From IMG/VR virus record IMGVR_UViG_3300023174_005338, positions 62,001 through 126,000 of that record: 64,000 nucleotides of DNA; one strand, 5' to 3'. Below are positions 12,707 through 38,994 of the stretch, piece after piece. Position 1 is the first letter of the stretch. Each line of letters begins with the position of its first letter. The notes below the pieces were generated by a model. It had not been told where the DNA came from, ran no database searches, and was given only the letters and a program-made list of their open reading frames with translations. A program made the translations under genes and the position numbers.

Positions 12707-13097
12707 TCAGCGGTTGCACTGCCACGTGGAACTGGAACCCGTGGGCAATCCCGAAGTGTCGGTGATCATTGCCGGTGTGTATGGAGGCGGAAAACTTTTC
12801 AAGTCCGTTGAGTTCAATATCAACGTTGACTTATTGAAGCCTTTCACTATTGAAATTGAACTTCGAAATAAAACATACTCCACTGATCATGAAACTGCTG
12901 TGATCGTCAAACAGTTACAAATTGACGATATTGATCTTGTGCCCAGATTTGACTATCTAGCTGTGTACAACAACGATCACAACAACACCAACCCTACCAG
13001 CTACCTGGGTTTTAATGGTAAGTGGACACTAACTATTGATAGGCCTTTTTATCAATGGTTGCATCAGACCACAGCACAAGGCTGGCTTATAAGTTAG
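12675..13097 (+). CDS. Hypothetical protein
   Basis: 140-aa ORF coupled to the radical SAM gene. Confidence 0.65.
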   Translation: MKTYSDLQAIDQRLHCHVELEPVGNPEVSVIIAGVYGGGKLFKSVEFNINVDLLKPFTIEIELRNKTYSTDHETAVIVKQLQIDDIDLVPRFDYLAVYNNDHNNTNPTSYLGFNGKWTLTIDRPFYQWLHQTTAQGWLIS

Positions 13098-13155
13098 TGC
13101 GCACTAACCCTTTGATTTTGCTACGGTTGACCAAAAATGCCCGATTTGCTATACT
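13093..13155 (+). promoter_or_regulatory. 16-bp palindrome plus early promoter
   Basis: GTTAGTGCGCACTAAC (13093-13108), then TTGACC-N17-TATACT (13127-13155). Confidence 0.75.
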
Positions 13156-13184
13156 AGTTCTATAGTAAACAAAAAGGAGCAACC

Positions 13185-13598
13185 GTGAGCAAACAAATCC
13201 AATACGCAGGTTACAGCATCGTGAAAGACGGCACCTGGAAATTCCGTACTGCCACCGATGAAAAACGCATCGCCCAACTAGAAGCATTTGGTGAATCGGT
13301 GTACATGGTCAGTATCAAACCCGTGGCCACCAAGGGTGCGGCTGCCAAAGAACTCTTGGCCATGGATTACATGGGCAAAGATCCCGAGTGTGTGGCGTTC
13401 TTTGTGAAACATGCAAAAGACGAGAATCCGTTCAAGCCCAAAAAGGTTCGCACTGTAAAAGTCAAGGTCTCCAAGTCTAATCCAGTGGAGGCCTATTTCT
13501 TGGCAGTGGAGGCTGATCAACCCGTGAGTCGTAAAGAAGCGGCCCGTTTGCGTGCCGAGTTCAACGAGCGTGTCAGAATTGCTTACGAAGCCAACTAA
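13185..13598 (+). CDS. Hypothetical early protein
   Basis: AAGGAG RBS, GTG start. Confidence 0.75.
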   Translation: MSKQIQYAGYSIVKDGTWKFRTATDEKRIAQLEAFGESVYMVSIKPVATKGAAAKELLAMDYMGKDPECVAFFVKHAKDENPFKPKKVRTVKVKVSKSNPVEAYFLAVEADQPVSRKEAARLRAEFNERVRIAYEAN

Positions 13599-13608
13599 GG
13601 AGACCCAC

Positions 13609-13788
13609 ATGGCCAAATTCCGAGTACTAGCCAGCGAAACTGTTTTTTACGAGTTCTTTGTAGAAGCCGAAACCGAAGCCGAAGTCCATAGACGCATCGA
13701 CATCGGCGACTACGACACAGGTCCAGCCTACGATGGCGACAATTTTGAAATCGACAGCATTGAACAGGAGACAGAACATGTCAGTTAA
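13609..13788 (+). CDS. Small acidic hypothetical protein
   Basis: AAGGAG RBS; MAKFRVLASE... Confidence 0.7.
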   Translation: MAKFRVLASETVFYEFFVEAETEAEVHRRIDIGDYDTGPAYDGDNFEIDSIEQETEHVS

Positions 13789-14050
13789 TCACATCGTAAC
13801 AGAACTCATGAGCGGCACCTTGACCAACGATGACATCGAGAAGGTGGCCCAGGCTCTCAAATACGCCCGTGCCCAAGTTGGTCGAGAAGTCAAGCGTCAA
13901 CTGGCTCCGGGAGCAAGCGTGAGGTTTTATCATCCCAAACAGAATTTTTACATCGCCGGCACTGTGAACCGCATCAAACAGAAATATGTCCTGGTCGACA
14001 CACCCAGGGGACGATACAATGTGCCGGCTAACTTGTTGGAAGTGGCATGA
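13778..14050 (+). CDS. Hypothetical protein (SH3-like C-terminus)
   Basis: CAGGAG RBS; GASVRF...GTVNRIKQKYVLV...RYNVPANLL. Confidence 0.7.
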   Translation: MSVNHIVTELMSGTLTNDDIEKVAQALKYARAQVGREVKRQLAPGASVRFYHPKQNFYIAGTVNRIKQKYVLVDTPRGRYNVPANLLEVA

Positions 14051-14286
14051 AACACCTGCCGGTAGAAACTTTTATCGCAGGCTTTGCGGAGTTTCACATG
14101 TTGTTGAAGGACTATCCAGGTCTGCGTATGGTGCCTATCCAGCATTACGACACAGTGAAATCTGGTTTGACCAACCTGGGCTACAGATTCCGTATCCGAT
14201 ATCGTGGTCCACACAGACCCGAACACGATACACTCAAGCAAGATGCCCGAGCATTCACAGTTTACCTACAAGAGGAAATCATATGA
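14047..14286 (+). CDS. Hypothetical protein
   Basis: ATGA-coupled 79-aa ORF. Confidence 0.65.
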   Translation: MKHLPVETFIAGFAEFHMLLKDYPGLRMVPIQHYDTVKSGLTNLGYRFRIRYRGPHRPEHDTLKQDARAFTVYLQEEII

Positions 14287-14447
14287 TCAACATCAGCGAT
14301 TTTGTACAAGTCAAAAATCAACCTGGAATAACCGGGCAAATCATTGAACTACACGGCAACAAGGCTGTGATCATTGACGATGCCAGTGAATATGAATACC
14401 CAGAAAACTGCCTGGAATTTAAAATTTCGGACTTGCAACCCTTGTAA
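14283..14447 (+). CDS. Small hypothetical protein
   Basis: GAGG RBS; MINISDFVQVK... Confidence 0.6.
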   Translation: MINISDFVQVKNQPGITGQIIELHGNKAVIIDDASEYEYPENCLEFKISDLQPL

Positions 14448-14456
14448 ACACAAGGA

Positions 14457-14526
14457 AAAAAGTCTTTAAAAATCAATGACTTACAGCGCCTAAAAAGTTC
14501 TTAAAAATCAATGACTTACACGACCT
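14457..14526. repeat. Tandem 2 x 35-bp intergenic repeat
   Basis: Identical 20-bp core TTAAAAATCAATGACTTACA at 14466 and 14501. Confidence 0.9.
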
Positions 14527-14548
14527 AAAAAAGCTGGATATTTTTTGG

Positions 14549-14577
14549 TTGACCAAAAACACCATTTAGGGTATAAT
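14549..14577 (+). promoter_or_regulatory. Early promoter
   Basis: TTGACC-N17-TATAAT. Confidence 0.8.
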
Positions 14578-14608
14578 GTATGTATAGTGATTAATAAGGA
14601 GCTGAAAA

Positions 14609-14872
14609 ATGGTTGGACTAACAATAGTAGATGGTGACGTAATCCGTGCATATGACTTCAAGCCCATGGCGGGCCGTGAAGACTGCTTCATCGAAGGTGA
14701 GGTTTTGGATTCTGGTGATACTAGTCAAGGTTACCAAGCATACCGGATCCGTGTGACCCGTGACAGCTGGTCAGATAGTGAAGACAAGGGTCGTGTTGGT
14801 ATTGAGATGTTTGTGCCTTGGAGAGTGAGTTTTAACGAGTTCCAAGGTCGTGTAATGAACCTGAGCAGATAA
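14609..14872 (+). CDS. Hypothetical early protein
   Basis: TAAGGAG RBS. Confidence 0.7.
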   Translation: MVGLTIVDGDVIRAYDFKPMAGREDCFIEGEVLDSGDTSQGYQAYRIRVTRDSWSDSEDKGRVGIEMFVPWRVSFNEFQGRVMNLSR

Positions 14873-14873
14873 C

Positions 14874-15245
14874 GTGAAGGCCTTTCAAGAGATCACAGAA
14901 TGGGACAGCGACTTCGCTGTCCCAAACCACGTTTATTTTTTGTCAGACGCAAAGGACAAGATGTACGGCTATGTTCAAGCTGGCACTGGCCTTGTGCAGA
15001 CCATGCGCTCACCATATAGATTTCATGTGCGTGGTCGTAAGTTCCGAGAGGTCAAAAATGTCTGGAACTTTGGTGTGGATGATACTCCAGAACCTTCCAA
15101 CGGAAAAGAATATCGAGTGTTAGGTAGCCGGAACAACGTCTACACAGTGACCAATGACCGCGGAAGTTGGTCTTGCACTTGCCCTGCCGCAAAATGGCAA
15201 AAGGGCGAATGCAAGCATATTGTAAAATTAAAGTCCGAATCTTGA
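14874..15245 (+). CDS. SWIM zinc-finger protein
   Basis: WSCTCPAAKWQKGECKHI (CxC...CxH). Confidence 0.8.
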   Translation: MKAFQEITEWDSDFAVPNHVYFLSDAKDKMYGYVQAGTGLVQTMRSPYRFHVRGRKFREVKNVWNFGVDDTPEPSNGKEYRVLGSRNNVYTVTNDRGSWSCTCPAAKWQKGECKHIVKLKSES

Positions 15246-15959
15246 CCGGTAGTAGTTGAAGTTTTGAGCAACCTCTGTACCAGTTAGTGCTGAGTTGTAG
15301 ACATTAACAATGGCCAATCGGCCGCCCCATAACCCACCCGGATCCCAGCGAGTCATCAAACCATATCCAATTCCAGGGTTGGCAGCAGCACCGGGCGGTG
15401 CAACAGCAGTTTGCACCAGGGTGTTGTTTACATACAAGTTGAGAGTGGTGCCGTCAAATGTGCCCACAATCTGATACCATGCTCCGGGTGTTAGTGAATA
15501 CCCCGACGGAGTAGTTTGAAATCCCGCACTATAATACCATACCTGTAGATCAGTATCAGCGGCGTTGGCACCCAGACCAAGATTTATGGTACCGCCACCA
15601 TATTGATATTCTGTGAATATGTTGGGTCCAGAGGATGTGTTGGTTCCGTCATAGTAGTGCCAGGCTTCGATTGACCAGTTGGCCAATGTGCCCAAGTTTG
15701 GTGTTGTGCTATAGCCAAACTGTCCAGCGTTGGGATTGAACTGTAGATATCCACCGTTGGCACTGTTATAGGTGGGACCGTTTACCAGCGTAAATGACAT
15801 GGATCCTACTGTGTCGGTCCATGTGCTACCTGACCCAGGATAGCTGGCAGGATTGCCAGCGTCAAGACTCAAGACTTGATTAGTCAACGGAGATGCCGAT
15901 GAGGAACTAATCTCTACACCAGCTCCAACGGTGATTCCGGGTCCTATTGTTATGGCCAT
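15228..15959 (-). CDS. LamG / ConA-like lectin domain virion protein
   Basis: SLDAGNPASYPGSGSTWTD, GAWYQIVGTFDG, VYNSALTGTEVAQNFNY. Confidence 0.85.
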   Translation of the reverse strand: MAITIGPGITVGAGVEISSSSASPLTNQVLSLDAGNPASYPGSGSTWTDTVGSMSFTLVNGPTYNSANGGYLQFNPNAGQFGYSTTPNLGTLANWSIEAWHYYDGTNTSSGPNIFTEYQYGGGTINLGLGANAADTDLQVWYYSAGFQTTPSGYSLTPGAWYQIVGTFDGTTLNLYVNNTLVQTAVAPPGAAANPGIGYGLMTRWDPGGLWGGRLAIVNVYNSALTGTEVAQNFNYYRSRFGL

Positions 15960-15972
15960 ATTAGTATCCCGT

Positions 15973-18900
15973 TCAACTTATTTGCGCCCAACCGTAACGC
16001 ACAGTTACAGCATTGCCGCTGGCGTTGTTGATGCCAAAGTCAAATCTATTGGTAGTTGCAGTAGGAGCCGTACTGGATCGCACAATGGTATTTGATGTTC
16101 CCACGAACTGATTAGGTATGCTGGTAAAGTCAATGGGTGTTCCACCACCTGTGTAGACCCAGGCATACTGAGCACCCACAACAGGTACGTTGGTGTTGGT
16201 AATGGTAGCCGTGGCATTCCAAGTCAAGATACCATTGGGGATATTACAATCCACCCACATGTAGTAGGTGTTGCTGGGAGTCACTGTGAAACTCTGAGTG
16301 CTGTTGCCGGTAGGCACAGTCCAAGTGCTTTCAAATGTTGTAGTAACATTGGATAATGTTGCGCCATTGCCAACAAAACTGTTAGCTGTAACAACATTGG
16401 CACCTGTAATGTTGCCGCCTGTCATGGTAATGTTGCCGGCCGAGCCTGAGGTGATCAAATTGCCACCTGTAACGTTGCTTGTAGCAACCACATTGCCAGA
16501 GGCACTTAAAGTTATGGCCGATACGCTGTCAAATCCTGACAGATAAGGTGCTGGACTTGCATTCGAGCCCACAATACCACCAGAAGATACAATTAAATTT
16601 CCACCCGCTGGCAGAGTCAAATTACCAGCAGTGTCAAATGTCCATTGAGCTGTGTTGCCAGCGGTGTTGACTATAATATTACCTGTGTTGGCCAATTTGA
16701 CATAAAAGTCATCATTGCCCAAATACAATTCGGTATTGAGTAAGTTGCCCGTGGTAAGATGTAAATGGTTACCTTCGACAATATTGCCAGTTGGGTATAC
16801 CAACAGTTGTTGGTCGGCGTCAGATCCGCCCGACGGTGTTATAGCAATGGTATTTCCAAGACCCGTTGGTGCTGCACCTTCTGATACAACGCCACCCGAT
16901 GGTAGTGTCAAATTACCGTTTTCATCGAATGTCCAACGAAGTGCTATACCGTCACTTGCTTTCTGATTTTCAATGTATACTTGAGGTTTGTTTATTAGAT
17001 TATCTTTGAATGTTACATCTATCCAAGACCATGCATCATTAGGTCCAGTAGCAACATCTTCTACGTATACATCCCAAACACCTGCTGTTTGATACTCTAC
17101 TGTTCTATAATTTCCAAATGTTGTTGTGAGTTGCAATGATATATCAGAAGTTATGTTACCTGTAGGGAATGTTGTAGACCCATCTGCGGCAAAGGTCCAG
17201 GTATTACCGCCAGTTTCAATATTGACATGACCTTCATTTGCTTGACCGTTGCCCGAAGCACCGCCCCAGATATTGACATTACCGCCCGTTGCTGTACCAT
17301 AGCCGCCATACATCTTTACATCACCGCCTACAGTAGCACCTTGCCCGCCAGTAATTTCAACGTAGCCGCCTGTGGTATTGCCACCTTGACCGCCGGTGAT
17401 TTCAATAAAGCCAGGGGCACCATTGGCCTGTGAGGCACCACCATCTATGCGGATATAACCGCCGGTGCCGTCTGCTGGAGCATAACCACCACGGATCTTG
17501 ACGTCACCACCGGAACCGTTGTTGTTGCCACCACGACCGGCCCATAAGTAGATGTCGCCACCTTCTCCGCCGTTGCTGTCTTCACCTTTGCCAGGATTGA
17601 TAACTAATCGTTGGCTATTAATACCATCTGCATTACTACCATCTGGAGTGGAGATAATGGCTTCTTGTGTGGCATCTCCAAACAACAGGGTTTGACCAGT
17701 AATAGTACCGCTCGAGATATCACCACGCTGTGTGGTCAGGGTTGGGAATATTGTGCCGCCATCAGGAGCAAAGGTCCAGGTATGTGGTGTTCCGTTGCTG
17801 GCCTGTATAGATACATTGCCATCAACATTAACAGTGACATTGGCAAAGTCGTCAGTTCCAAGAATAACAGTTTCACCGTTGCCAGCAATGTGAATATCTG
17901 GACCTGTGGTCAGATAGATGTTCAAGTATGCGTCAGCATTAGCAGGATCTGGCTGTAAATATAAGTTACCATCACCGATTATGTTGACATCATTGAATGT
18001 GACATTGCCGGTGTTGGCAGTTGAAATTCCAGTGAGTTGACTCCCGTCGCCAAGGAAAAAGTTGGCAGATACATTGCCCGTGGTATTGATGTTGCCATTG
18101 GTAGCAAACGTACCATCAAGGCCAAATTGCCAAACAAATGCATTTGCTGTGCCGTAACCTGCGCCAATCTCAATAAACAAATCATCGTTTACCTGTATGT
18201 ATTGCTGACCGTCTTGGCTGGAAATACCACCAGTACCGTTGCCGGGTGTTACAAACCAACTGTTGTTGGCACCTGTGAGGCCTGGATAATTTGATATTAG
18301 GCCACCAGTTGGGAATGTGGTAGTACCAGTGTTGTCAAAGGTCCATTGATGACTGTTACCAGTTTCATTGTATTGTGTGGCGATGTAAGCACCGTTGGCA
18401 TCAACCCACATCCAGGAGTTTTCACCATCGTTGGTAGTGAGTCCGGCATAGCCGCCGGCCACTGCTCGCAGGGTGGATCCATTGATGATACTTTGATCTG
18501 GCAAGATGACCACACCATTGGTGTCTACTTGCAACGCATAGTGCTGTGCAGGATTTGAGATATTGGTATTGTATAGGCTACTGGTACTAACTTGATTGCT
18601 GGCATTTAATGAGAATCCGTTGCCCAGAGCAACTACACCCGGTGTAGAGTTGGTGGCCACGGGCAAATTGGCCACGGGCAAATTGGAAAGTTGACTGCCA
18701 TCGCCGATGAAGTAGTCAGCAGTGATGTTGCCTGTTGTAGAGATTGAAGTGTTGCTATCGTTGCTCAATAATGCTTCGCCGTTGACTGTGAGCACATTGC
18801 CTGCACTTAAACTAATAGGCACATTGTTCATGAAGATGGTGGCATTGCTCACATACAAATCATTCCACTGATTTGTAGCATTACCTAAACTGTAAACTGC

Positions 18901-19491
18901 ATTGCCACTGGGAATGATATTGCCAGTGACATTGAGGCCAATGTTGGTGTTCCAAGCATTGTTGGCGCTGTTAAACAAGAATGTGGCTATGGCATCGTTG
19001 GCACCCACGGTCATGCCCGACCCGTTGGCTGCATTAGCCGAAGCCGCTGTGTTGGCCAACTGTATGGTCTTGGCATCTGTGACAAGATTACCAATTTGGA
19101 TGGTATTTCCGGTCACTGTCAGATTGCCGGTCACTGTCAAATCGCCCACATTGAATGTGCCGGCAAGATCTATGTTGCCCGAAATGTTGGCATACTGAAT
19201 GTAAAGTTCGCTCCATCTGCGTGTGGACGACCCTAGATTTCTTATATTTGCGAGATTTGGTAATATGCTAACATTACTCTGCACCACTCCTATGCCGTTG
19301 GGGGCCAGGATCAAGTTGCCATTGGTGTTGGTGGTTAAAATTTTGTTGTTGGCGATTTGGATGTTGCTGAGCACTGGACCCGCGGCAAAAACCTGATCAA
19401 AATTCAAGTTGGTTTCGTTGAAAGCGGTTCTCAGCGGATCGCCGGTGCCATCATTAGGTATAGCGCCGATGTTGATTACATATTGGGTCAT
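15973..19491 (-). CDS. Tail fibre protein
   Basis: N-terminal INIGAIPNDGTGDPLRTAF, repeated WTFxxDGxxxFP modules, Gly-rich segment, GN/ANN-rich low complexity. Confidence 0.85.
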   Translation of the reverse strand: MTQYVINIGAIPNDGTGDPLRTAFNETNLNFDQVFAAGPVLSNIQIANNKILTTNTNGNLILAPNGIGVVQSNVSILPNLANIRNLGSSTRRWSELYIQYANISGNIDLAGTFNVGDLTVTGNLTVTGNTIQIGNLVTDAKTIQLANTAASANAANGSGMTVGANDAIATFLFNSANNAWNTNIGLNVTGNIIPSGNAVYSLGNATNQWNDLYVSNATIFMNNVPISLSAGNVLTVNGEALLSNDSNTSISTTGNITADYFIGDGSQLSNLPVANLPVATNSTPGVVALGNGFSLNASNQVSTSSLYNTNISNPAQHYALQVDTNGVVILPDQSIINGSTLRAVAGGYAGLTTNDGENSWMWVDANGAYIATQYNETGNSHQWTFDNTGTTTFPTGGLISNYPGLTGANNSWFVTPGNGTGGISSQDGQQYIQVNDDLFIEIGAGYGTANAFVWQFGLDGTFATNGNINTTGNVSANFFLGDGSQLTGISTANTGNVTFNDVNIIGDGNLYLQPDPANADAYLNIYLTTGPDIHIAGNGETVILGTDDFANVTVNVDGNVSIQASNGTPHTWTFAPDGGTIFPTLTTQRGDISSGTITGQTLLFGDATQEAIISTPDGSNADGINSQRLVINPGKGEDSNGGEGGDIYLWAGRGGNNNGSGGDVKIRGGYAPADGTGGYIRIDGGASQANGAPGFIEITGGQGGNTTGGYVEITGGQGATVGGDVKMYGGYGTATGGNVNIWGGASGNGQANEGHVNIETGGNTWTFAADGSTTFPTGNITSDISLQLTTTFGNYRTVEYQTAGVWDVYVEDVATGPNDAWSWIDVTFKDNLINKPQVYIENQKASDGIALRWTFDENGNLTLPSGGVVSEGAAPTGLGNTIAITPSGGSDADQQLLVYPTGNIVEGNHLHLTTGNLLNTELYLGNDDFYVKLANTGNIIVNTAGNTAQWTFDTAGNLTLPAGGNLIVSSGGIVGSNASPAPYLSGFDSVSAITLSASGNVVATSNVTGGNLITSGSAGNITMTGGNITGANVVTANSFVGNGATLSNVTTTFESTWTVPTGNSTQSFTVTPSNTYYMWVDCNIPNGILTWNATATITNTNVPVVGAQYAWVYTGGGTPIDFTSIPNQFVGTSNTIVRSSTAPTATTNRFDFGINNASGNAVTVRYGWAQIS

Positions 19492-19621
19492 AGGTGGATT
19501 CAGCCTTTTTCATTATTTATGGCTAAATGCTGATCCAAACTGTGTTGCGCATTGTGCAATAGCATGCTATACTAGTCCTACGCTGTGTAAAAGCAGTGAA
19601 CTATTTAGAAAGGTAACACAA

Positions 19622-19885
19622 ATGAAGTTTATCAATCCAGAAACAAAAACGTTTCGTGTATTCCAAGCACTACAAAGTGGTAAAGCCTTGACAGCCAGCC
19701 AAGCCAAGAAAATGGGCATTGGCAACTTGGGCGCAGAAGTACACCGCATTCGCCAACATGGATTCGCAGTATATACGAATTCACGCAAAGCCGGCAATGG
19801 TGTAAATGTAACCGAGTATGTGATCGGAAAACCCAGCCGTAACTTGGTAGCCGCTGGCTATCGTGCTCTCGCTTTAGGTATCTAA
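19622..19885 (+). CDS. Small winged-helix-like DNA-binding protein
   Basis: VFQALQSGKALTASQA...LGAEVHRIRQHGFAVY; RBS AAGGT. Confidence 0.65.
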   Translation: MKFINPETKTFRVFQALQSGKALTASQAKKMGIGNLGAEVHRIRQHGFAVYTNSRKAGNGVNVTEYVIGKPSRNLVAAGYRALALGI

Positions 19886-19954: not shown

Positions 19955-19961
19955 CTTTAGC

Positions 19962-27929: not shown

Positions 27930-28160
27930 AACGTGTTCTGTAGCAGGAACTAGTCTGACCCGGACGATTGAACTGGAGTAGCTACCAGGGGTGGCAGTCT
28001 CCCAACCTAGAGGCCGCTGGCAATGCGAAAACGGTCCCCGCGTGGAGCGGATGGTGAGGTAGAGATTGTGGTCTTGCTGAGTCCTATCGGGCAACCAAGA
28101 TGTGCTGTCATTGGATTATGGCACGGATTTCTACTATAGTAACCGCCGGGGGACGCAGAG
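27930..28160 (+). ncRNA. Putative structured non-coding RNA, family unassigned
   Basis: GC-rich gap with no convincing ORF and nested helices GTCCCC/GGGGAC, GCGG/CCGC, GTAGAGATT/GATTTCTAC closing two hairpins (TCTTG/CAAGA; GTGCTGT/ATGGCAC); strand assumed from the flanking operon. Confidence 0.55.
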
Positions 28161-28166
28161 CATTAT

Positions 28167-28219
28167 GTTAGTGAACACTAACATCAGTAGTTGACAAAGT
28201 CCAGCATTTGTAGTATAAT
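28167..28219 (+). promoter_or_regulatory. 16-bp palindrome plus promoter
   Basis: GTTAGTGAACACTAAC (28167-28182), 8 bp, then TTGACA-N17-TATAAT. Confidence 0.75.
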
Positions 28220-28305
28220 TACTAATAGCTAGCCAATTTAAACTTGAAGAAGTTGGCGGCTGTTTATTAACCGACAGTCTCAGGACTGCTATGAAAGGAT
28301 GTAAA

Positions 28306-29367
28306 ATGGCACAGCGCCTTACCCGCAAACTTACCGATGTGGCCGCGGAAGTTGAAAAGCAAATCAAGGCCCACTACAACATCACGCAACGAGAACTTGA
28401 TTCTTTCCGTGAACGAGCTCAAGCAAAACATAAATTGGGTTTAGATTTTCCTGAATCAAAAATGGTTCCTATTGATGATCTTTGGATTGACTACGAAGTC
28501 CAACGAGATGTCTTGCACAAACACATCATCAGTATCATGAAAAATTGGGATCCAAGAATTTGTAGTCCTGTGTCGGCTTGCCGTTTGCAAGATCGCGATC
28601 GCAACGATACATATGATGGTCAGCACAGAACCATCTCGGCTACTATTTTAGGCTATAAAGAAATTCCCGGAGCAGTGGTTCATACCGATGATCCAAACTT
28701 TGCTAGCCTGGCCTTTGAAATGCTCAATGACACTGGTGTAAAACGTTTAGGTCCAGGAGACTTGCATCGTAACGCCTTGGTTCGTTACAAAAATGGCAGC
28801 CGAGAAAGCCGGAATGTGTGTGCTCGCACTTTGCAAGATCAATTTGATAATTTACAAATCGACCTGCAAGACAAAGGTTCCCGGTCCAGCGATAATTTAC
28901 GTGGCGATCATGATTACTTCTTTAGTCATTTCAAGTACGCATACAAAGGCATTGAGATTGACGAATCCGGCAAGGTATTGTATGCCATACTGGAGGCTAT
29001 AAAAACAGTGTTTCCTTTGCAAGAAGAAATCGATCAAGGTGTGTTTATTGGGTTGTGCGAATTGCAACGCCTAAACAGCACAAACTCACGCAACAAATTG
29101 CCCGACGGTTGGATGAAAATTTTATTGGAATCTGCCAAGACTACTTTTAAAAGTAGTCACTTGATACATGCCAAGGCAAAAATCCAATGGGAACACAGTC
29201 ATCCAGGTGCAGGCTGGGTGGCACCCACTGCCATGAGCAACTTCCTGCGTGAGATGCACTTACGCAACGGTGGTCAGTTAAATCTCCCCTATCACGGCGA
29301 AGGTGCCAAGGTTGGTATTGTGGATGGTAATGTTGCTCCAGGACTGTTTCCACAAGGAGGCGAATAA
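28306..29367 (+). CDS. ParB/Srx-superfamily protein with DGQHR motif
   Basis: LWIDYEVQRDV...WDPRI...YDGQHRTISA...AFEMLND; AAAGGA RBS. Confidence 0.8.
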   Translation: MAQRLTRKLTDVAAEVEKQIKAHYNITQRELDSFRERAQAKHKLGLDFPESKMVPIDDLWIDYEVQRDVLHKHIISIMKNWDPRICSPVSACRLQDRDRNDTYDGQHRTISATILGYKEIPGAVVHTDDPNFASLAFEMLNDTGVKRLGPGDLHRNALVRYKNGSRESRNVCARTLQDQFDNLQIDLQDKGSRSSDNLRGDHDYFFSHFKYAYKGIEIDESGKVLYAILEAIKTVFPLQEEIDQGVFIGLCELQRLNSTNSRNKLPDGWMKILLESAKTTFKSSHLIHAKAKIQWEHSHPGAGWVAPTAMSNFLREMHLRNGGQLNLPYHGEGAKVGIVDGNVAPGLFPQGGE

Positions 29368-29848: not shown

Positions 29849-30399
29849 AAGAAAGTCTTGATCAATTTACGGCACCCATCTACGGCAAAACTCAGCGCAC
29901 CCCCGATACCTATCGCACAGTGGCCGCTTACTGTAAGAAGAATCTGGATCGCTTGGTCAACAACTACAATGAAGTAGTAAATGATCAACAGTTATTGCGT
30001 GAAATCCGTAATGATATTGACACATACTTGCGTCGCTATCATGAATACTGCATCCAGCAACGTGATGGCATGCTGGCTCACTATCATGAAATAGGCGCCG
30101 ACACGGATTGTGATTTTGAACATCTGATACCAGCGGCTCGTATTCGTGATTTACTTCTTGCCGGCGCCATTACAGTAGAACAAGCTCTTAATGCTCCTAC
30201 AGTGAGATTGAGTCGGGCCAAACACCGGGCACTCAAAGATGCAGGTTGGTCCGCCAAAACTCCCAACATGTGGTTGCCGTTTGAACGCTATACCAATGTG
30301 TTTGGAGCTACTTACCAAACCCACGACGGAACGGCTGTTGATCCGTTGACATGGACCTTGGAAAAGCATTACAATTACTTTCAACACCTTGTGTTATGA
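29842..30399 (+). CDS. Hypothetical protein with HNH-like EHxxP motif
   Basis: DCDFEHLIP followed by a predicted strand/helix (PTVRLSRAKH). Confidence 0.55.
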   Translation: MLKESLDQFTAPIYGKTQRTPDTYRTVAAYCKKNLDRLVNNYNEVVNDQQLLREIRNDIDTYLRRYHEYCIQQRDGMLAHYHEIGADTDCDFEHLIPAARIRDLLLAGAITVEQALNAPTVRLSRAKHRALKDAGWSAKTPNMWLPFERYTNVFGATYQTHDGTAVDPLTWTLEKHYNYFQHLVL

Positions 30400-31457
30400 A
30401 CAATTACTTAGAAACCATCCGAACCAAGTACGACATCAAGGACTATGTTGAAACGCCTGTGACCATACCTGATTTGCCTACTGAAGGCATTGTGCTGATA
30501 GTAGGAACTTCGGGTTCAGGCAAGAGCACGATCCTGCGCAGACTTGGTCACACCCAAGCCGTGACGTCGAGTCCTTGCAGTACTGTGATAGAAAACTTTT
30601 CTACCCCTGAACGCGGCGAGGAATTACTTCTAGCCGCAGGCTTGCGTAGCATACCCACTTGGTTCCGGCCACCTAATACATTGAGCAATGGTGAATATCA
30701 CAGATTTGAAATGGCCATGGCCATAGATCAAGGTATCCGTTGCATTGACGAATTCACTAGCGTAGTTGACCGCGACACAGCCAAGAGCTTGGCCTACAGT
30801 GTGAGGAAGTATTACAATCAGAATCCTGGTGTGCTATATATTGCCAGTTGCCACAGAGACATAACGGAGTGGTTGGATCCTGACTGGGTCTACGACACAG
30901 ACCTGCAGAAACTTGATAATCGGAGGTCACTTCTTCGACTGGGGACAAGACCAAAACTCACACTCACCATCCGAAGCACAACTCCGGACTATTGGCGATA
31001 TTTCAGTAAATATCATTATCTAGATACCCGGATGAGCCGTAGCGTTCATTGCTATGTGCTGTTGCTAGGTGACAAGCCCATTGGTTTCCATGCTGCAATA
31101 CATTCAACCAATAGAGATATTCACAGTTACTGGCGTGGACACAGGACTGTGATACTGCCTGAGTTTCAAGGCATGGGTATAGGCACTGCGTTCAGTGATG
31201 CCATAGCACAGATCTATGTGGATCGCGGCCTAAGATACTTTAGCAAGACTGCTCATCCAAGTTTTGGTGAACACAGAGAAAAGAGTCCCTTATGGCGGCC
31301 AACCAGTACCAACCGTAAGAGTCGAAAAGGCAGTTATCTGCTCAAGGATGGCTCAATCAGAGCCATGCCCGGCTACGGTGGTAATGCAGAAATCGCTCGA
31401 AGAGATGCAGATCGTGTGTGTTACAGCCACGAATACATTGGCGTCAAGAAGAACTGA
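30396..31457 (+). CDS. ABC-type ATPase fused to GNAT acetyltransferase
   Basis: Walker A GTSGSGKS, signature LSNGE, Walker B IDEFTS, H-loop SCH; C-terminal WRYFSKYHYL...VILPEFQGMGIG. Confidence 0.88.
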   Translation: MNNYLETIRTKYDIKDYVETPVTIPDLPTEGIVLIVGTSGSGKSTILRRLGHTQAVTSSPCSTVIENFSTPERGEELLLAAGLRSIPTWFRPPNTLSNGEYHRFEMAMAIDQGIRCIDEFTSVVDRDTAKSLAYSVRKYYNQNPGVLYIASCHRDITEWLDPDWVYDTDLQKLDNRRSLLRLGTRPKLTLTIRSTTPDYWRYFSKYHYLDTRMSRSVHCYVLLLGDKPIGFHAAIHSTNRDIHSYWRGHRTVILPEFQGMGIGTAFSDAIAQIYVDRGLRYFSKTAHPSFGEHREKSPLWRPTSTNRKSRKGSYLLKDGSIRAMPGYGGNAEIARRDADRVCYSHEYIGVKKN

Positions 31458-33422: not shown

Positions 33423-33564
33423 GGTTGCCTTACTTGGGTTGCCTTGCCTACATACTTACCGATTCAAATATACCTATAAAAATATATTCGGCAAACTATA
33501 GGCACAATCTATTAAAAAGCACCATATATACTGCTATAATATAGTTTTTTAATAGGAGAATACT

Positions 33565-33696: not shown

Positions 33697-33730
33697 CGTA
33701 GATTTATTTTTTTTTAAAGGAGTAGTAAAA

Positions 33731-34168: not shown

Positions 34169-34182
34169 TCGGAGGCAGGAGT

Positions 34183-35361: not shown

Positions 35362-35382
35362 TTTTAAAACAACTGACCTAGA

Positions 35383-35889
35383 TCACTTGCCTTTGCGAAC
35401 TTCACCGGTTTGGTCGGGCCACCAATCAGGATCTGGATCCAGACGATTTTTATACAAGGCCTTGATTCTGCGTTCGTATTCTTCTTTGCTGCCTTTGACA
35501 CGGCCCGATACCACATCCAACACATAGTTCAAGGTCACTGCATTGGCACTCAGTGTGGCACAACGTGCTGTGACTTCATTTTTCAGCAAATCCAGCAAGA
35601 TGCTTTCAGAGCTGTCTGCCAGCACCCTAACGTATTTTTTGGGCACATGCAGGTCTATGGTGCTGTACACAAAATCATAGTGCGGAGCCGGACAACAGTG
35701 CAGGATGTATTCGTCCTTGACTTCTATGCGTTTGAACCCATCCTTGTTGTACCACACCGCACGATTGTCCGTGAGTTCATCAGGCTCGCCGAATTTCTTG
35801 GTCAAACTCTTTACAAATGCCACAGGCTCCTCGTTTTTCCAGGTAGTCAGTGACGCTCGGCTTTCCAGGATTATCTGATGTATTTTCAT
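35383..35889 (-). CDS. Hypothetical protein
   Basis: MKIHQIILES...; ATAAATA box 8 nt upstream. Confidence 0.7.
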   Translation of the reverse strand: MKIHQIILESRASLTTWKNEEPVAFVKSLTKKFGEPDELTDNRAVWYNKDGFKRIEVKDEYILHCCPAPHYDFVYSTIDLHVPKKYVRVLADSSESILLDLLKNEVTARCATLSANAVTLNYVLDVVSGRVKGSKEEYERRIKALYKNRLDPDPDWWPDQTGEVRKGK

Positions 35890-35896
35890 ATTAGTT

Positions 35897-36508
35897 CTAT
35901 TTATCGCGGGTCCAGAATCCAACACGTTCGTCTGAGGCGCTGGAATACCAACTGTAGCCCGGCGGTGGTGTAGGATCTTGACCCTGCCAAACAGGTATGA
36001 TTTCGTCACTGTTGTGATTGCGGAAATCGTCGTTGTATCTAAGATGTATTTCTATCACACGGTCACCAATGTATTCCACGTTGATCCATTCTTGAGTGCG
36101 TGCCAGCCCCTGTAACCAGGTGGGCAAGGGCAGAAAATCTGCAATGCGTCGCCATAGGCAAAATCTATCCAGACGCTCCCCATCACGAAAACCCTGTACT
36201 GTCAGTTGAGGTTGCCCCCAGTGATAGTCCACACTGATGTGTAGACCCAACAACCACTCACACCAAAAATGTCCGTCGGGCACCAGGTGGTCATCATCGG
36301 CGGTCAACCACAGCCGTTGAGCACCACGGCCCATCATGCGTATGTTGGTTATGGGTCGGACCACGTACCAGGCCGGTTCTGGAACAGTAATTCCTGCTGG
36401 TCCGGCCCGCAGGCCCTGCTGTCGTGCCACTATCAGTTTGTCGTAGATCCATAACCAGTCCTGAGGACATGTTGCCCATACATCACAGTCACTGACAGTT
36501 TCTATCAT
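35897..36508 (-). CDS. Minimal ATP-grasp-like protein
   Basis: VVRPITN...GRG, WCEW...HISVD, INVEYIG..IEIHLRYN. Confidence 0.55.
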   Translation of the reverse strand: MIETVSDCDVWATCPQDWLWIYDKLIVARQQGLRAGPAGITVPEPAWYVVRPITNIRMMGRGAQRLWLTADDDHLVPDGHFWCEWLLGLHISVDYHWGQPQLTVQGFRDGERLDRFCLWRRIADFLPLPTWLQGLARTQEWINVEYIGDRVIEIHLRYNDDFRNHNSDEIIPVWQGQDPTPPPGYSWYSSASDERVGFWTRDK

Positions 36509-36552
36509 GATCTCATTATATATCTGTTAATCTGCCTCAGACAACAGTTCTG

Positions 36553-36570
36553 GTGTCACACTGCTGTAAC
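36553..36570 (+). promoter_or_regulatory. Pho box (PhoB-binding direct repeat)
   Basis: GTGTCAC-ACTG-CTGTAAC: TGTCAC/TGTAAC half-sites exactly 11 bp apart, TAAATA about 11 bp further on. Confidence 0.65.
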
Positions 36571-36591
36571 ACACGGTCCTGTAAATAATGT

Positions 36592-37416
36592 ATGACAGGC
36601 CGCACTTATAGATCAATATTCATTTCAGACGTTCACCTTGGTACCAAGGACTGCAAGGCTGAACAACTCAACAACTTTCTCAAACACCACACCTGTGAAA
36701 CACTTTATCTTGTGGGTGACATCATAGACGCCTGGAAGATACAACAGAACAAATGGCGTTGGAAACAGAGCCATACCAATGTGATCCGTAGAGTGTTGGG
36801 TCATGCCAAACGTGGCACCAGAGTAATCTATGTGGCCGGCAATCATGACGAATTTCTCAGACCACTAATACCCTATGGCATAGGATTTGGCATGGTGGAA
36901 GTGGTCAATCAAACCGAACACATAGGTCTAGACGGACGTCACTACCTGGTCACACACGGGGATCTGTTTGATGGCATCACGAGGATCACACCTTGGCTGA
37001 GTTTCTTGGGTGATAGGCTGTATGATTTTGTGCTGAACCTCAACAGCAGATTCAACTGGCTACGTCATAGGCTGGGCTTTGGTTACTGGAGTTTGAGCAA
37101 GTTCTTGAAATATCGTGTGAAAAAAGCTGTGGACTTTGTGTTCCAGTTTGAACGCAACTTGGCCGCGTACTGCAAGAAGCGTGGGTTTGATGGGGTTATC
37201 TGCGGGCACATACATCATGCAGAAATCCGCGACATAGATGGTGTTGCCTACATGAATGATGGCGACTGGGTGGAATCAATGACTGCCCTGGTTGAACATC
37301 ACGATGGCAGGTGGGAAATAGTTACATGGACCAAGGAGATGGACGATGTGGTTGCTGATGTTGATAGCAGTTCACGTGAACAATCCCCAAGACGTGCCCG
37401 GAAGAGCAAGCATTGA
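36592..37416 (+). CDS. plcP: PlcP-type phospholipase C (LpxH-like metallophosphoesterase)
   Basis: FISDVHLG, VGDIID, GNHDEFLR, HGDLFD, YWSLSKFLKYRVKKAV, GVICGHIH, YMNDGDWVES. Confidence 0.82.
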   Translation: MTGRTYRSIFISDVHLGTKDCKAEQLNNFLKHHTCETLYLVGDIIDAWKIQQNKWRWKQSHTNVIRRVLGHAKRGTRVIYVAGNHDEFLRPLIPYGIGFGMVEVVNQTEHIGLDGRHYLVTHGDLFDGITRITPWLSFLGDRLYDFVLNLNSRFNWLRHRLGFGYWSLSKFLKYRVKKAVDFVFQFERNLAAYCKKRGFDGVICGHIHHAEIRDIDGVAYMNDGDWVESMTALVEHHDGRWEIVTWTKEMDDVVADVDSSSREQSPRRARKSKH

Positions 37417-37519
37417 GTTTGCCACCAAAGCAGAATGCATGCGAGCACAGGCCACAGTGGCCTATTGGCTCAAGTTTGACAGTTTCAAGGTAGTCACACA
37501 ATGCCAAAAACGATCCTGA
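37346..37519 (+). CDS. Small secreted or membrane protein overlapping plcP and the GT4 gene
   Basis: AAGGAG RBS; MWLLMLIAVHVNNPQDVPG...FATKAECMRA. Confidence 0.5.
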   Translation: MWLLMLIAVHVNNPQDVPGRASIEFATKAECMRAQATVAYWLKFDSFKVVTQCQKRS

Positions 37520-38508
37520 TCATAACTGACAATGTGCCCGGTCAAATCAACGGTGTGGTCACAACTTTCAAAAACTTGGAAGATTGCGCTGACCGTGACG
37601 GTTATCGTGTTGTTTATGTTGATCCCAGCCAGTTCCCTAATTTTGCTTGCCCTGGTTATGCTGAAGTTCGCTTGTGCTGGCCGCACGGTATCAGTAAAAA
37701 AATTAAGGCATTACGTCCAGACTTTATACACATCGCTACGGAAGGTCCGGTAGGTTTCTTTGCTCGCTGGTGGTGCGAACGCAATCACGTTCCTTACAAC
37801 ACAAGTTACCACACGGACTTTGCCAAGTTTTTGAAACGCATGTATCATGTTCCGGAGTCTTGGACCTGGTGGTATCTGCGTTGGTTTCATAAAAATAGTC
37901 AACGTGTGTTGGTCACAACTGCCAGCATCGAGCAAGAGTTAACGGCCCGTGGCTTTGAGAATCTTCGAGTCTGGACACGCGGTGTGGATCGAACTTATTT
38001 TTCCAGCAGTCTGCGAACTGGTTCCAATGTTAGACCCGTGTTGCTCAGCGTGGGACGTGTGTCAAAAGAAAAAGGTCTGGATGATTTCTGTCGGCTGGAT
38101 ATGCCGTGGTGTGAAAAAATCGTAGTAGGCGATGGTCCTTATCGAGCCGAACTAGAACGCAGATACCCCACGGTGAAATTTGTGGGCGCACAGCGTGGTC
38201 TGGAACTGGCCAGTTACTATGCACAGGCTGATGTGTTTGTGTTCACCAGCCGGGCCGATACATTTGGCGTGGTCAACATCGAAGCCCTGGCCTGTGGCAC
38301 TCCAGTGGCGGCCTATCCTGTGCCTGGGCCCATAGACATAGTAGAATCTGGTGTAACAGGATACCTGGACTGGAATCTTGCTCATGCCGTGGAACGCTGT
38401 TTGACTCTGGATCGTGATCGGGTGGAACAGGCCAGTCGTCGTTGGACCTGGGACGCATGTTGGCGCATATTCCGTGACAATTTAGTAGACATAAATCGGG
38501 CACAATGA
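37501..38508 (+). CDS. GT4 glycosyltransferase, Agt-like diacylglycerol glycosyltransferase
   Basis: TDNVPGQINGVVTT, HIATEGPVG, SYHT, VGRVSKEK, DTFGVVNIEALACGTPV. Confidence 0.85.
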   Translation: MPKTILIITDNVPGQINGVVTTFKNLEDCADRDGYRVVYVDPSQFPNFACPGYAEVRLCWPHGISKKIKALRPDFIHIATEGPVGFFARWWCERNHVPYNTSYHTDFAKFLKRMYHVPESWTWWYLRWFHKNSQRVLVTTASIEQELTARGFENLRVWTRGVDRTYFSSSLRTGSNVRPVLLSVGRVSKEKGLDDFCRLDMPWCEKIVVGDGPYRAELERRYPTVKFVGAQRGLELASYYAQADVFVFTSRADTFGVVNIEALACGTPVAAYPVPGPIDIVESGVTGYLDWNLAHAVERCLTLDRDRVEQASRRWTWDACWRIFRDNLVDINRAQ

Positions 38509-38568
38509 TTAGGTGCCGCCGGAGCCCGTAACCGGACATAATCTGTTGCGTAAAAACAACACCCAAAC

Positions 38569-38591
38569 GCCCTAGTAAAATAGGGCTTTTT
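38569..38591 (+). terminator. Intrinsic terminator
   Basis: GCCCTA-GTAAAA-TAGGGC-TTTTT; same stem family as 19927. Confidence 0.75.
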
Positions 38592-38609
38592 CTTGGGTTT
38601 ACCAAAAGG

Positions 38610-38638
38610 TTGACCAGAATTTACCGATTTGCTATACT
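38610..38638 (+). promoter_or_regulatory. Early promoter
   Basis: TTGACC-N17-TATACT. Confidence 0.8.
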
Positions 38639-38668
38639 AGTATTATAGTAAACAATAAGGAGCAAAAG

Positions 38669-38941
38669 ATGAGCAAACTTACAGCATACACAGTAGAAAT
38701 TTACAAAGCCGATCGCCGTGTCAAGGCTGGTCGCAGACTGGTTGAGAAGCGTGATTTTGAGCCAGTTACCCAAGATTATATCAACAGCGTGGTTGGAGGT
38801 TTCAAGTCCCGAGGCTTTATTGCAGAAGTTCACGAAACCTTTGTGACCAAGAAAAACCTCATGGGTGGTCGGGAATTCACTGAGCGGTATGATACTCCGC
38901 ACTTTTGCTCACCTGCAAGTGAGAGCTACTGGTCAGCCTAA
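38669..38941 (+). CDS. Hypothetical early protein
   Basis: TAAGGAG RBS. Confidence 0.7.
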   Translation: MSKLTAYTVEIYKADRRVKAGRRLVEKRDFEPVTQDYINSVVGGFKSRGFIAEVHETFVTKKNLMGGREFTERYDTPHFCSPASESYWSA

Positions 38942-38994
38942 GTTAGCGGGCACTAACCTGCCCGGTTGACCAGAATTTACCGATTTGCTATAAT
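38942..38994 (+). promoter_or_regulatory. Imperfect 16-bp palindrome plus early promoter
   Basis: GTTAGCGGGCACTAAC, 8 bp, then TTGACC-N17-TATAAT; promoter nearly identical to the one at 38610. Confidence 0.75.

What the first reader, a model, noticed from the sequence alone, without database searches (positions are those of the whole stretch)
13093..38957. Recurrent 16-bp palindrome GTTAG(T/C)GNNCACTAAC in helical phase upstream of three early promoters
Seen: GTTAGTGCGCACTAAC (13093), GTTAGTGAACACTAAC (28167) and GTTAGCGGGCACTAAC (38942) end 18, 8 and 8 bp before a -35 hexamer, i.e. the same face of the helix (8 versus 8+10). Inference: a binding site for a dimeric activator or repressor co-regulating two early-gene cassettes and the DGQHR/nuclease operon. 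The small winged-helix protein at 19622 is one candidate. A short terminator hairpin is the alternative, but no U-tract follows directly.
Basis: partly seen in the sequence, partly recalled or inferred. Interest (0 to 1): 0.6.

Follow-up and report, generated by a model that had tools for sequence, protein, structure and literature searches.

The report
Phased palindromic operator before phage promoters
A 16-20 bp palindrome sits whole helical turns upstream of some strong early promoters in a group of uncultured freshwater jumbo phages, so it is most likely the docking site of a still unidentified dimeric regulator and not a terminator.

Summary
GTTAG(T/C)GNNCACTAAC stands at window 13093, 28167 and 38942, ending 18, 8 and 8 bp before near-consensus sigma-70-type promoters. 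None is expected by chance.

The window belongs to a 337-kb jumbo phage with terminal repeats. The genome holds two more good copies and one degenerate copy. In four motif-bearing genomes, 15 of 18 copies lie 5-40 bp upstream of a promoter-like site, against about 1% expected.

Across 31 non-identical sites the gap to the -35 falls into classes of 7.6, 18.1, 27 and 38 bp. The best-fit period is 10.3 bp (R = 0.87). Classic terminators in the same position show no such period.

The arms never vary, the centre does, and the variable positions show no base-pair covariation. The RNA hairpin is weak and has no U-tract. Classic terminators occur beside the palindrome.

A face-of-helix DNA operator is therefore the best reading, embedded in PeSL-like promoter cassettes that shuffle between phages. 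The binder is not identified. The winged-helix candidate and the adjacent ParB/KorB-like DGQHR protein also occur in relatives that have no sites. Two co-occurrence leads failed an independent test.

The parts
13093..13108 (.). Palindrome site 1, GTTAGTGCGCACTAAC. The TAG inside it is the stop codon of ORF 12675-13097.
   Evidence: It ends 18 bp before the -35 at 13127. The orthologous site in relative G001 has the same arms and the same gap, but a different spacer sequence.
13018..13033 (.). Degenerate copy GTAAGTGGACACTAAC (one mismatch) inside ORF 12675-13097, 75 bp upstream of site 1. That distance is about 7 helical turns.
   Evidence: A similar tandem pair 32 bp apart occurs in L448. Cooperative binding is inference only.
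13127..13155 (+). Sigma-70-type promoter TTGACC-17-TATACT with a TG extension, followed by a conserved leader, a Shine-Dalgarno sequence and a GTG start at 13185.
   Evidence: The same promoter is present in relative G002 without the palindrome.
13185..13598 (+). First gene of the cassette downstream of site 1 (137 aa, no family match).
   Evidence: It is variably present among relatives.
28167..28182 (.). Palindrome site 2, GTTAGTGAACACTAAC. This is the most widely conserved location of the motif.
   Evidence: The same motif lies upstream of the orthologous promoter in at least 11 diverged relatives, with gaps of 7-9 or 17-19 bp. Four lake metagenome runs list changes in the spacer (28185, 28189) and none inside the palindrome. 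This is weak support, because 160 further differences were not shown.
28191..28219 (+). Consensus promoter TTGACA-17-TATAAT (12 of 12) with a 71-nt leader before the ATG at 28291.
28291..29367 (+). The 358-aa DGQHR protein (TYDGQHRT), with a ParB/KorB/Noc-like fold. It is a candidate binder by family analogy only.
   Evidence: Model pLDDT is 87.8. The top Foldseek hits are KorB 8qa9/8qa8, Noc 7ol9/7nfu and ParB 6t1f, at E about 2e-3 and probability about 1. The protein is present at 68-97% identity in all relatives, including those without any site. No residue tracks the presence of the site.
38942..38957 (.). Palindrome site 3, GTTAGCGGGCACTAAC (one arm mismatch), directly after the TAA stop of ORF 38669-38941.
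   Evidence: The identical 16-mer variant is in distant relative G003. It forms the left edge of an 89%-identical 436-bp block shared with G003.
38966..38994 (+). Promoter TTGACC-17-TATAAT with a TG extension.
   Evidence: A near-identical promoter at 38610-38638 is preceded by a classic terminator (38569-38586) instead of the palindrome.
39025..39372 (+). The 115-aa gene driven by the site-3 promoter (phrog_22149, function unknown).
   Evidence: It is 96% identical in protein to its G003 counterpart, although the genome-wide median identity to G003 is 46%.
19409..19885 (+). Winged-helix protein (PF14090 HTH_39, residues 83-141).
   Evidence: E = 3e-7. It is present in motif-bearing and motif-less genomes alike, so it is neither supported nor excluded.

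Best explanation
The palindrome is a DNA operator. Its extended consensus is A-R-GTTAGT-R-NN-Y-ACTAAC-Y-T, about 20 bp. A sequence-specific protein dimer recognises the two invariant half-sites. The site lies upstream of the -35 of a subset of strong sigma-70-type promoters. Assuming a 17-bp spacer and a start 7 nt after the -10, its centre falls near -51.5, -61.5, -70.5 or -81.5, so it always faces the same side of the helix as the promoter-bound polymerase. From there the bound factor most likely touches RNA polymerase (the alpha C-terminal domain or sigma region 4) or occupies the UP-element position. That would put a few cassettes under common temporal control. These include the ParB/KorB-like DGQHR operon and some small-gene cassettes. 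Because the promoters are already near consensus, repression or timed shut-off seems more likely than activation. Shown: the motif, its selection, its tie to promoters and its phasing. Inferred: that a protein binds, what it is, and the sign of regulation. The sites are optional add-ons to PeSL-like promoter cassettes. Orthologous promoters in close relatives lack them, and a unit of palindrome, promoter and gene has moved between distant phages.
For: (1) Non-random occurrence. There are 0 expected matches in the window. In 1.16 Mb of this genome and relatives' loci there are 22 distinct copies, against about 0.07 expected by my arithmetic. It is the top recurrent palindrome in every motif-bearing genome. 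(2) Tie to promoters. In G000, G001, G003 and G007, 15 of 18 copies end 5-40 bp before a TTGAC-N16-18-TAnnnT site, while 1.1% of positions qualify (binomial P about 2e-27). (3) Phasing. Across 31 non-identical sites the gap classes are 7.6 +/- 0.95 (n = 15), 18.1 +/- 0.74 (n = 14), 27 and 38 bp. The best period is 10.3 bp with R = 0.87, and 0 of 200,000 uniform-null draws reach it. The spacer sequences are unrelated to each other. GC-rich terminators upstream of the same promoters give classes of 7.3 +/- 1.7 and 21.0 +/- 1.3 bp, with R of 0.30-0.37. (4) Selection on sequence, not on pairing. Orthologous sites keep the arms while the centre and spacer change. At the variable positions 7/10, 8/9 and 0/17, Watson-Crick pairs number 18, 10 and 10, against 19.2, 10.9 and 13.0 expected under independence. 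A-C (6) outnumbers A-T (1) at positions 7/10. (5) Not a terminator. RNA hairpins fold at only -5.3 to -7.2 kcal/mol, with z-scores from +0.7 to -2.1 against shuffles, and at site 3 the minimum-energy fold on the + strand uses a different hairpin. No terminator-like call is made at any site. Classic terminators sit before the palindrome (L011:12057) or between it and the promoter (G003:168324, L223), and even then the gaps are 27 and 38 bp. (6) The flanks are symmetric: A at position -1 in 24 of 31 sites, T at position 18 in 23 of 31.
Against: No binding protein is identified. The only protein whose presence matches the motif in 10 complete or nearly complete genomes is a 248-aa protein of unknown function. 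The two obvious DNA-binding candidates, the winged-helix protein and the ParB-like DGQHR protein, are equally present in genomes with zero sites. No bacterial genome is enriched for the 20-bp consensus: 32 hits against about 35 expected by my arithmetic. No expression or transcript-end data exist, because no RNA run holds the phage. The promoters are predicted, not mapped. Many sites are orthologous, so the 31 sites are not 31 independent events; collapsing similar spacers still gives R = 0.72 and p about 6e-7. The left flank A-R may partly reflect the TAA/TAG stop codons of the upstream genes. The copy at G000 40702 has no convincing promoter downstream.
Confidence: 0.55

Rival explanations
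1. The palindrome is a recombination or shuffling element. It would be the 'stem-loop' part of PeSL-like mobile promoter cassettes. Its sequence would be kept because it serves as the crossover or recognition point for cassette exchange, by homologous recombination or by an unknown site-specific enzyme, and not because a transcription factor binds it.
For: The composite layout (stem-loop, sigma-70 promoter, conserved leader, Shine-Dalgarno sequence, start codon) matches the PeSLs described in T4-type phages (PMC2839356, PMC4122927). The sites sit in regions with many genes that vary between relatives. A block of 89% nucleotide identity between G000 and the distant G003 starts 3 nt before palindrome 3 and ends at the end of the 115-aa gene. 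G003 carries that gene and the upstream gene at two different places, each with its own palindrome. The motif's distribution among relatives is patchy and not clade-like. No dedicated binder gene was found.
Against: Recombination alone does not explain a 10.3-bp periodic distance to the -35 with unrelated spacer sequences. It also does not explain invariant arms beside a freely varying centre and spacer in orthologous sites. Most PeSL-like cassettes in this genome use ordinary terminators instead. The two roles are not mutually exclusive.
Confidence: 0.2
2. The element acts at the RNA level. The hairpin at the 3' end of the upstream message would act as a factor-dependent terminator, a stabiliser against 3' exonucleases, or a recognition hairpin for a phage RNA-binding protein or nuclease.
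For: It lies directly after, or overlaps, the stop codon of the upstream gene at most sites. It occupies the place that classic terminators hold upstream of other promoters. The 6-bp stem with a 4-nt loop can form. Invariant arms could also reflect sequence-specific recognition of an RNA hairpin.
Against: The stem is weak and A/U-rich, at -5.3 to -7.2 kcal/mol, no better than shuffles at site 1 and displaced by another fold at site 3 on the + strand. There is no U-tract and no terminator-like call. Variable positions show no covariation, and A-C mismatches are tolerated at positions 7/10. True terminators co-occur on either side. A transcript element has no reason to keep a helical-repeat distance to the next promoter.
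Confidence: 0.12
3. The binder is a host protein, for example a global or stress regulator of the unknown freshwater host. Motif-bearing phages would then be those that infect hosts owning that factor. This is a variant of the operator model.
For: Motif presence is patchy among relatives and no phage DNA-binding gene follows it. Unrelated P22-portal-type phage contigs carry arrays of the same palindrome. In several bacteria the same 16-mer overlaps a -10 box like a local repressor operator. Cyanophages are known to carry host NtcA and PhoB sites (from my own knowledge).
Against: No bacterial genome among 185,579 species shows enrichment of the strict 20-bp consensus: 32 hits against about 35 expected by my arithmetic. 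The host is unknown. A 7-nt half-site has only 16,384 possibilities, so identity with operators of unrelated phages or bacteria can be coincidence.
Confidence: 0.2

Closest known systems
PeSL (promoter-early stem-loop) cassettes of T4-type phages (Arbiol et al. 2010, PMC2839356; Comeau et al. 2014, PMC4122927)
   Same: Both are composite repeats: a stem-loop just upstream of a near-consensus sigma-70 early promoter, followed by a conserved leader, a Shine-Dalgarno sequence and a start codon. Both lie in variable gene regions and at homology breakpoints between related phages.
   Different: PeSL stem-loops are described as terminator-like, and their stem consensus differs between phage pairs. 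Here one specific A/T-rich dyad is invariant across phages that share only about 46-54% median protein identity. It has no U-tract, it coexists with true terminators, and it is spaced from the -35 in helical turns. The phages are uncultured freshwater jumbo phages with no cultured relative found for the two proteins searched. They were not shown to be T4-type.
KorB operators (OB) of plasmid RK2, and parS/NBS sites of ParB/Noc
   Same: These are 13-16 bp perfect palindromes scattered a few to a dozen times over a replicon, some directly upstream of promoters. They are bound by a ParB-family HTH protein whose gene lies next to a site. The gene after the best-conserved palindrome here has a KorB/Noc/ParB-like fold. 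The KorB half-site TTTAGC (from memory) resembles GTTAG(T/C).
   Different: The ParB-like protein here is 68-97% identical in all relatives, including genomes with no palindrome at all. No residue covaries with site presence. There is no sequence-level family match, and CTP binding and DNA binding are untested.
Upstream dyad sites of polymerase-contacting phage and bacterial regulators (CRP class I sites near -61.5/-71.5; phi29 p4; P2 Ogr dyad near -55). Positions are recalled from memory.
   Same: In both, a dyad-symmetric site upstream of the -35 must be on the correct helical face, and positions differ by whole turns.
   Different: The promoters here already have consensus -35 and -10 boxes, so activation is not obviously needed. 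The commonest position, about -51.5, is not a classical CRP class I position. The sequence matches none of these factors' sites.

Membership tests
Intrinsic (Rho-independent) terminator | G+C-rich stem of at least 5 pairs with several G-C pairs | tested here: not met
   The arms GTTAGT/ACTAAC hold 2 G-C pairs in 6. The scan made no terminator-like call at any of the three sites. Hairpin energy is -5.3 to -7.2 kcal/mol, with z from +0.7 to -2.1 against shuffles.
Intrinsic (Rho-independent) terminator | Run of U directly after the stem | tested here: not met
   The sequences after the stem are CCTTTGAT, ATCAGTAG and CTGCCCGG. True terminators with T-runs occur separately beside the palindrome in L011, G003 and L223.
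Structured RNA element (conserved hairpin) | Compensatory changes that keep base pairs | tested here: not met
   At the variable positions, observed Watson-Crick pairs do not exceed the number expected under independence (18 against 19.2, 10 against 10.9, 10 against 13.0). A-C occurs 6 times and A-T once at positions 7/10. The arms never vary, so they say nothing either way.
PeSL cassette | Stem-loop immediately upstream of a sigma-70-like early promoter, followed by a conserved Shine-Dalgarno sequence and start codon | tested here: met
   compared with the description in PMC4122927.
PeSL cassette | Association with insertion, deletion and replacement breakpoints between related genomes | tested here: met
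   A homology block with G003 begins at palindrome 3 and ends at the gene's end, and the downstream genes are variably present among relatives. This rests on a few cases only; no genome-wide statistics were made.
PeSL cassette | The stem-loop acts as the terminator of the upstream unit | tested here: inconclusive
   The sequence features argue against an intrinsic terminator. No transcript data are available.
ParB/KorB-type operator (parS/OB) | Short perfect palindrome in a few copies, one of them next to the gene of a ParB-family protein | tested here: met
   There are 5-6 copies per genome. Site 2 is directly upstream of the promoter of a protein with a KorB/Noc/ParB-like fold.
ParB/KorB-type operator (parS/OB) | Site and cognate protein occur together and co-vary | tested here: not met
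   The protein is present at 70-87% identity in four complete genomes that have zero sites. No discriminating residue was found.
ParB/KorB-type operator (parS/OB) | Specific binding of the protein to the site | not testable with these tools
   No protein-DNA prediction or assay is available here.
Operator of a dimeric DNA-binding regulator (generic) | Dyad symmetry with conserved half-sites about one turn apart and a free centre | tested here: met
   The half-site centres are 9-10 bp apart. The arms are invariant, the central 2-4 bp vary, and the flanks are symmetric.
Operator of a dimeric DNA-binding regulator (generic) | Fixed stereo-specific position relative to the promoter | tested here: met
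   Period 10.3 bp, R = 0.87, across 31 sites. The terminator control gives R of 0.30-0.37.
Operator of a dimeric DNA-binding regulator (generic) | An identified cognate protein | tested here: inconclusive
   The profile search leaves one protein of unknown function. The MBD4-like and Gp2-like leads were refuted. The winged-helix and ParB-like proteins are not linked to motif presence.

The most novel reading that the evidence does not exclude
The palindrome is the parS/OB-like site of the phage's own, highly conserved ParB/KorB-like DGQHR protein. From helically phased positions this protein would silence or insulate a set of early promoter cassettes and autoregulate its own operon. That would be a KorB-type global regulatory circuit in a jumbo phage. 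Relatives without the palindrome would then use sites not yet recognised.
Probability: 0.12. Interest if true: 0.7.

Novelty: new variant of a known kind. Interest (0 to 1): 0.45.

Why it matters
Very little is known about how uncultured jumbo phages time their early genes. Here the regulatory site can be read from sequence alone. It is a 20-bp dyad at positions that differ by whole helical turns, attached to movable promoter cassettes, and present in some lineages and absent from close relatives. This gives a concrete, synthesisable probe for fishing out the regulator, whether phage or host. It provides natural promoter pairs with and without the site for reporter tests. It also shows that the 'stem-loop' of PeSL-type cassettes may in some phages be a protein operator and not a terminator. 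The finding is not a new principle of regulation.

Tried and rejected
1. MBD4-like HhH-GPD glycosylase (P0001). It had a perfect presence/absence match with the motif in 8 genomes, and its stop codon lies inside palindrome 173428. It was rejected because 11 further contigs carrying the gene (1.9 Mb, one 99% complete) hold no palindrome.

2. The 49-aa protein (window 56520-56669) with a Gp2-like fold. It matched the motif in 8 genomes. It was rejected as motif-linked because it is present in the motif-less, 99%-complete G016.

3. Winged-helix protein (window 19409-19885) and the ParB-like DGQHR protein. Neither co-occurs or co-varies with the motif.

4. Alternative palindromes in motif-less relatives. 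None recurs four times or more, except one in G006 that occurs four times and was not examined further.

5. Host regulon. A scan of 185,579 bacterial species for the 20-bp consensus gave 32 hits, which is about chance (about 35 by my arithmetic), and no genome was enriched.

6. Host identification through a phage TctC-like gene found no close bacterial relative.

7. Cultured relatives. There was no DNA or protein match for the region or for the DGQHR protein in 50,697 phage records.

8. Rfam gave nothing at the gathering thresholds, or at E <= 1 around site 2. No tRNA genes were found in the window.

9. A literature search for the half-sites returned only chance primer matches.

10. Expression. 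No RNA run holds the phage. Laying lake metagenome contigs on 1,001 bases showed only strain variation.

11. The arrays of the same palindrome in P22-portal-type contigs share no protein with this phage within the stretches held here. They may be coincidental, given only 16,384 possible half-sites.

Full report
OBSERVATION. In 100 dinucleotide-preserving shuffles the mean number of matches was 0.00. Each ends 18, 8 or 8 bp before the -35 hexamer of a near-consensus sigma-70-type promoter. These are TTGACC-17-TATACT at 13127, TTGACA-17-TATAAT at 28191 and TTGACC-17-TATAAT at 38966. A one-mismatch copy lies at 13018, inside ORF 12675-13097.

The window is G000:62001-126000 of a 337,119-bp virus record with direct terminal repeats. 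The rest of the genome holds an exact copy at 40702 and GTTAGTGTATACTAAC at 173428. The latter ends 5 bp before a consensus promoter. The former is followed at 27 bp by a TTGACC that has no credible -10.

CONTEXT. The genome carries dozens of very similar promoter cassettes. Each has a GG-TTGACC box, a conserved spacer, a TATAAT box, a conserved leader, AAGGAG and a start codon. Most are preceded by an ordinary GC-rich hairpin with a T-run. Only a handful have the palindrome instead.

The gene after site 2 (358 aa) carries a DGQHR motif and is 65-97% identical in at least 80 IMG/VR contigs from freshwater metagenomes. No cultured phage matched the site-1 region or this protein. Runs that hold the phage are lake or freshwater DNA metagenomes.

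THE MOTIF IN RELATIVES. In about 13 of the 80 loci, GTTAGT-N4-ACTAAC stands before the orthologous promoter. In 1.16 Mb of this genome plus relatives' loci there are 22 distinct copies, where I calculate about 0.07 by chance.

Whole-record scans give 5, 3, 6, 2, 2, 2 and 1 copies in seven relatives. They give none in eight others, four of which are 89-100% complete. By median protein identity to G000, the motif-bearing genomes (82, 54 and 46%) interleave with the motif-less ones (65, 60, 58 and 45%). Presence is therefore patchy and not a clade. It is the top recurrent palindrome in each motif-bearing genome. Among the motif-less genomes only G006 has any palindrome that recurs four times, and I did not examine it. 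Orthologous promoters in G002 are intact but lack the palindrome.

TIE TO PROMOTERS AND PHASING. In G000, G001, G003 and G007, 15 of 18 copies end 5-40 bp upstream of a promoter-like site, whereas 1.1% of genome positions qualify (P about 2e-27).

For 31 non-identical palindrome-promoter pairs from this phage group, the gaps fall into classes of 7.6 +/- 0.95 (n = 15), 18.1 +/- 0.74 (n = 14), 27 and 38 bp. The best-fitting period is 10.3 bp with R = 0.87, and none of 200,000 uniform-null samples reaches it. The spacer sequences are unrelated, so length is conserved and sequence is not. After collapsing similar spacers, R is 0.72 and p about 6e-7.

As a control I used GC-rich terminators upstream of the same promoter type. 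They show classes of 7.3 +/- 1.7 and 21.0 +/- 1.3 bp, with R of 0.30-0.37. With a 17-bp spacer and the usual numbering, the dyad centres fall near -51.5, -61.5, -70.5 and -81.5. This numbering is my inference; no start sites are mapped.

DNA OR RNA? The arms are fixed in every copy I selected, which is partly by construction. In orthologous sites, however, the arms stay the same while the centre and spacer change. Site 2 has AA in G000 and CG in G001, with different spacers.

The variable positions show no excess of Watson-Crick pairs, and A-C is tolerated at positions 7/10. The flanks are symmetric (A at -1, T at 18), which extends the site to about 20 bp.

As RNA the hairpins are weak, at -5.3 to -7.2 kcal/mol, with z-scores from +0.7 to -2.1 against shuffles. 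At site 3 the best fold on the + strand uses another stem. No site scores as terminator-like.

A classic terminator precedes the palindrome at L011:12057. A terminator lies between the palindrome and the promoter at G003:168324 and in L223, and there the gaps are still 27 and 38 bp. These points together favour a protein-bound DNA operator over a transcript element.

MOBILITY. The layout matches the PeSL cassettes of T4-type phages, in which a stem-loop lies just upstream of a sigma-70-like early promoter, a Shine-Dalgarno sequence and a start codon, and which are implicated in gene shuffling (PMC2839356, PMC4122927).

Here an 89%-identical 436-bp block shared by G000 and the distant G003 starts 3 nt before palindrome 3 and ends with the 115-aa gene. 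G003 holds the upstream and downstream genes at separate places, each with a palindrome. The operator thus travels with its promoter cassette. A recombination role is not excluded, but it does not explain the phasing.

WHO BINDS?

The DGQHR protein folds with confidence (pLDDT 87.8). Its best structural matches are KorB, Noc and ParB over 200-250 columns, at E about 2e-3 and probability about 1. Proteins of that family bind such palindromes, and site 2 is beside its gene. But it is 68-97% identical in all relatives, including genomes with no site, and no residue tracks site presence.

A presence/absence profile over eight genomes pointed to an MBD4-like glycosylase and a 49-aa protein. Both failed on independent contigs. 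A 248-aa protein with a basic C-terminal domain (phrog_7595) keeps a perfect profile in ten genomes, but its function is unknown.

A host factor remains possible. No bacterial genome is enriched for the strict consensus.

VERDICT. The operator reading, including the helical phasing, is supported. The named candidate protein is not. This is a new variant of known things, a phased operator built into PeSL-like mobile promoter cassettes, in an uncultured jumbo-phage group. It is of moderate interest, and clean experiments are now possible.

Noticed in passing
window 27945-28166 (+), directly upstream of site 2: A conserved non-coding element of about 220 nt. It occurs in G001, G002, G003 (partial), G005, G006 and several loci, and in G005 and G006 it lies far from the DGQHR gene. 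RNAalifold on 9 copies predicts 32 pairs, 12 of them with compensatory changes. There is no Rfam match even at E <= 1. In lake metagenome contigs the depth over it is several-fold that of the flanks and drops at the palindrome. It is a candidate new phage non-coding RNA.
   Followed up: partly
window 56520-56669 (+): A 49-aa protein, 88-90% identical in relatives that share only about 50% median protein identity. The predicted beta-beta-alpha-beta fold has T7 Gp2, the host RNA polymerase inhibitor, as its top Foldseek hit (4lk0_M, TM 0.79). VIA gives Z = 5.5 to 2lmc/2wnm, tied with ribosomal proteins. The nearest named Atlas cluster is PF16857, at a score of 0.79. No sequence-level match was found. 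It is a possible host-transcription shut-off factor.
   Followed up: partly
G000 173014-173442 (L351:3014-3442), outside the window: An MBD4-like HhH-GPD glycosylase of 142 aa (Pfam 25.7 bits, just under the cut-off). It lies next to GTP cyclohydrolase I and sugar-nucleotide enzymes. It has relatives in the Xanthomonas phage Xp12, which as I recall carries 5-methylcytosine DNA, and in cyanophage S-TIM54. At least 588 IMG/VR stretches encode a relative. This hints at a DNA hypermodification or repair module.
   Followed up: partly
loci L097, L105, L110, L111, L117, L126, L128, L133, L135, L136, L157 (unrelated viral contigs): Arrays of 5-7 copies of the same palindrome and degenerate variants, spaced 23-34 bp apart. 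They lie just upstream of a 149-aa ORF, a large terminase and a P22-type portal, and some are beside DnaA-box-like TGTGGATAA. They may be packaging or small-terminase sites or iterons. Identity with the jumbo-phage motif may be coincidence.
   Followed up: partly
window 38939-39372 (G000 100939-101372) versus G003 69443-69875: The unit of palindrome, promoter and 115-aa gene is 89% identical in DNA, and the 115-aa protein 96% identical, between genomes whose median protein identity is 46%. This points to recent lateral exchange of a single promoter cassette.
   Followed up: yes
G000 207290-208264 and 160689-161606 (L357, L358): Two phage-encoded TctC/Bug-family periplasmic solute-binding proteins (PF03401). 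They are auxiliary genes that may point to a betaproteobacterial host (from memory of where this family is expanded). No close bacterial relative was found.
   Followed up: partly
relatives' loci, leader of the DGQHR gene (for example L016, L021, L040): A conserved 5'-leader hairpin, CCCGCATTGTGTCGGG, lies just before the Shine-Dalgarno sequence of the DGQHR gene in many relatives. The window's own leader has a different sequence at that place.
   Followed up: no
G000 245116-260094 (-), outside the window: A single open reading frame of 4,992 aa, conserved in all relatives at 34-70% identity. Its function was not examined.
   Followed up: no
window 30351-31457 (+): A 368-aa fusion of a P-loop ATPase and a GNAT acetyltransferase at the end of the DGQHR operon. 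It is present only in G001 and G003 among the relatives, and it gives weak matches to the candidate defence proteins mad3 and mad8.
   Followed up: no
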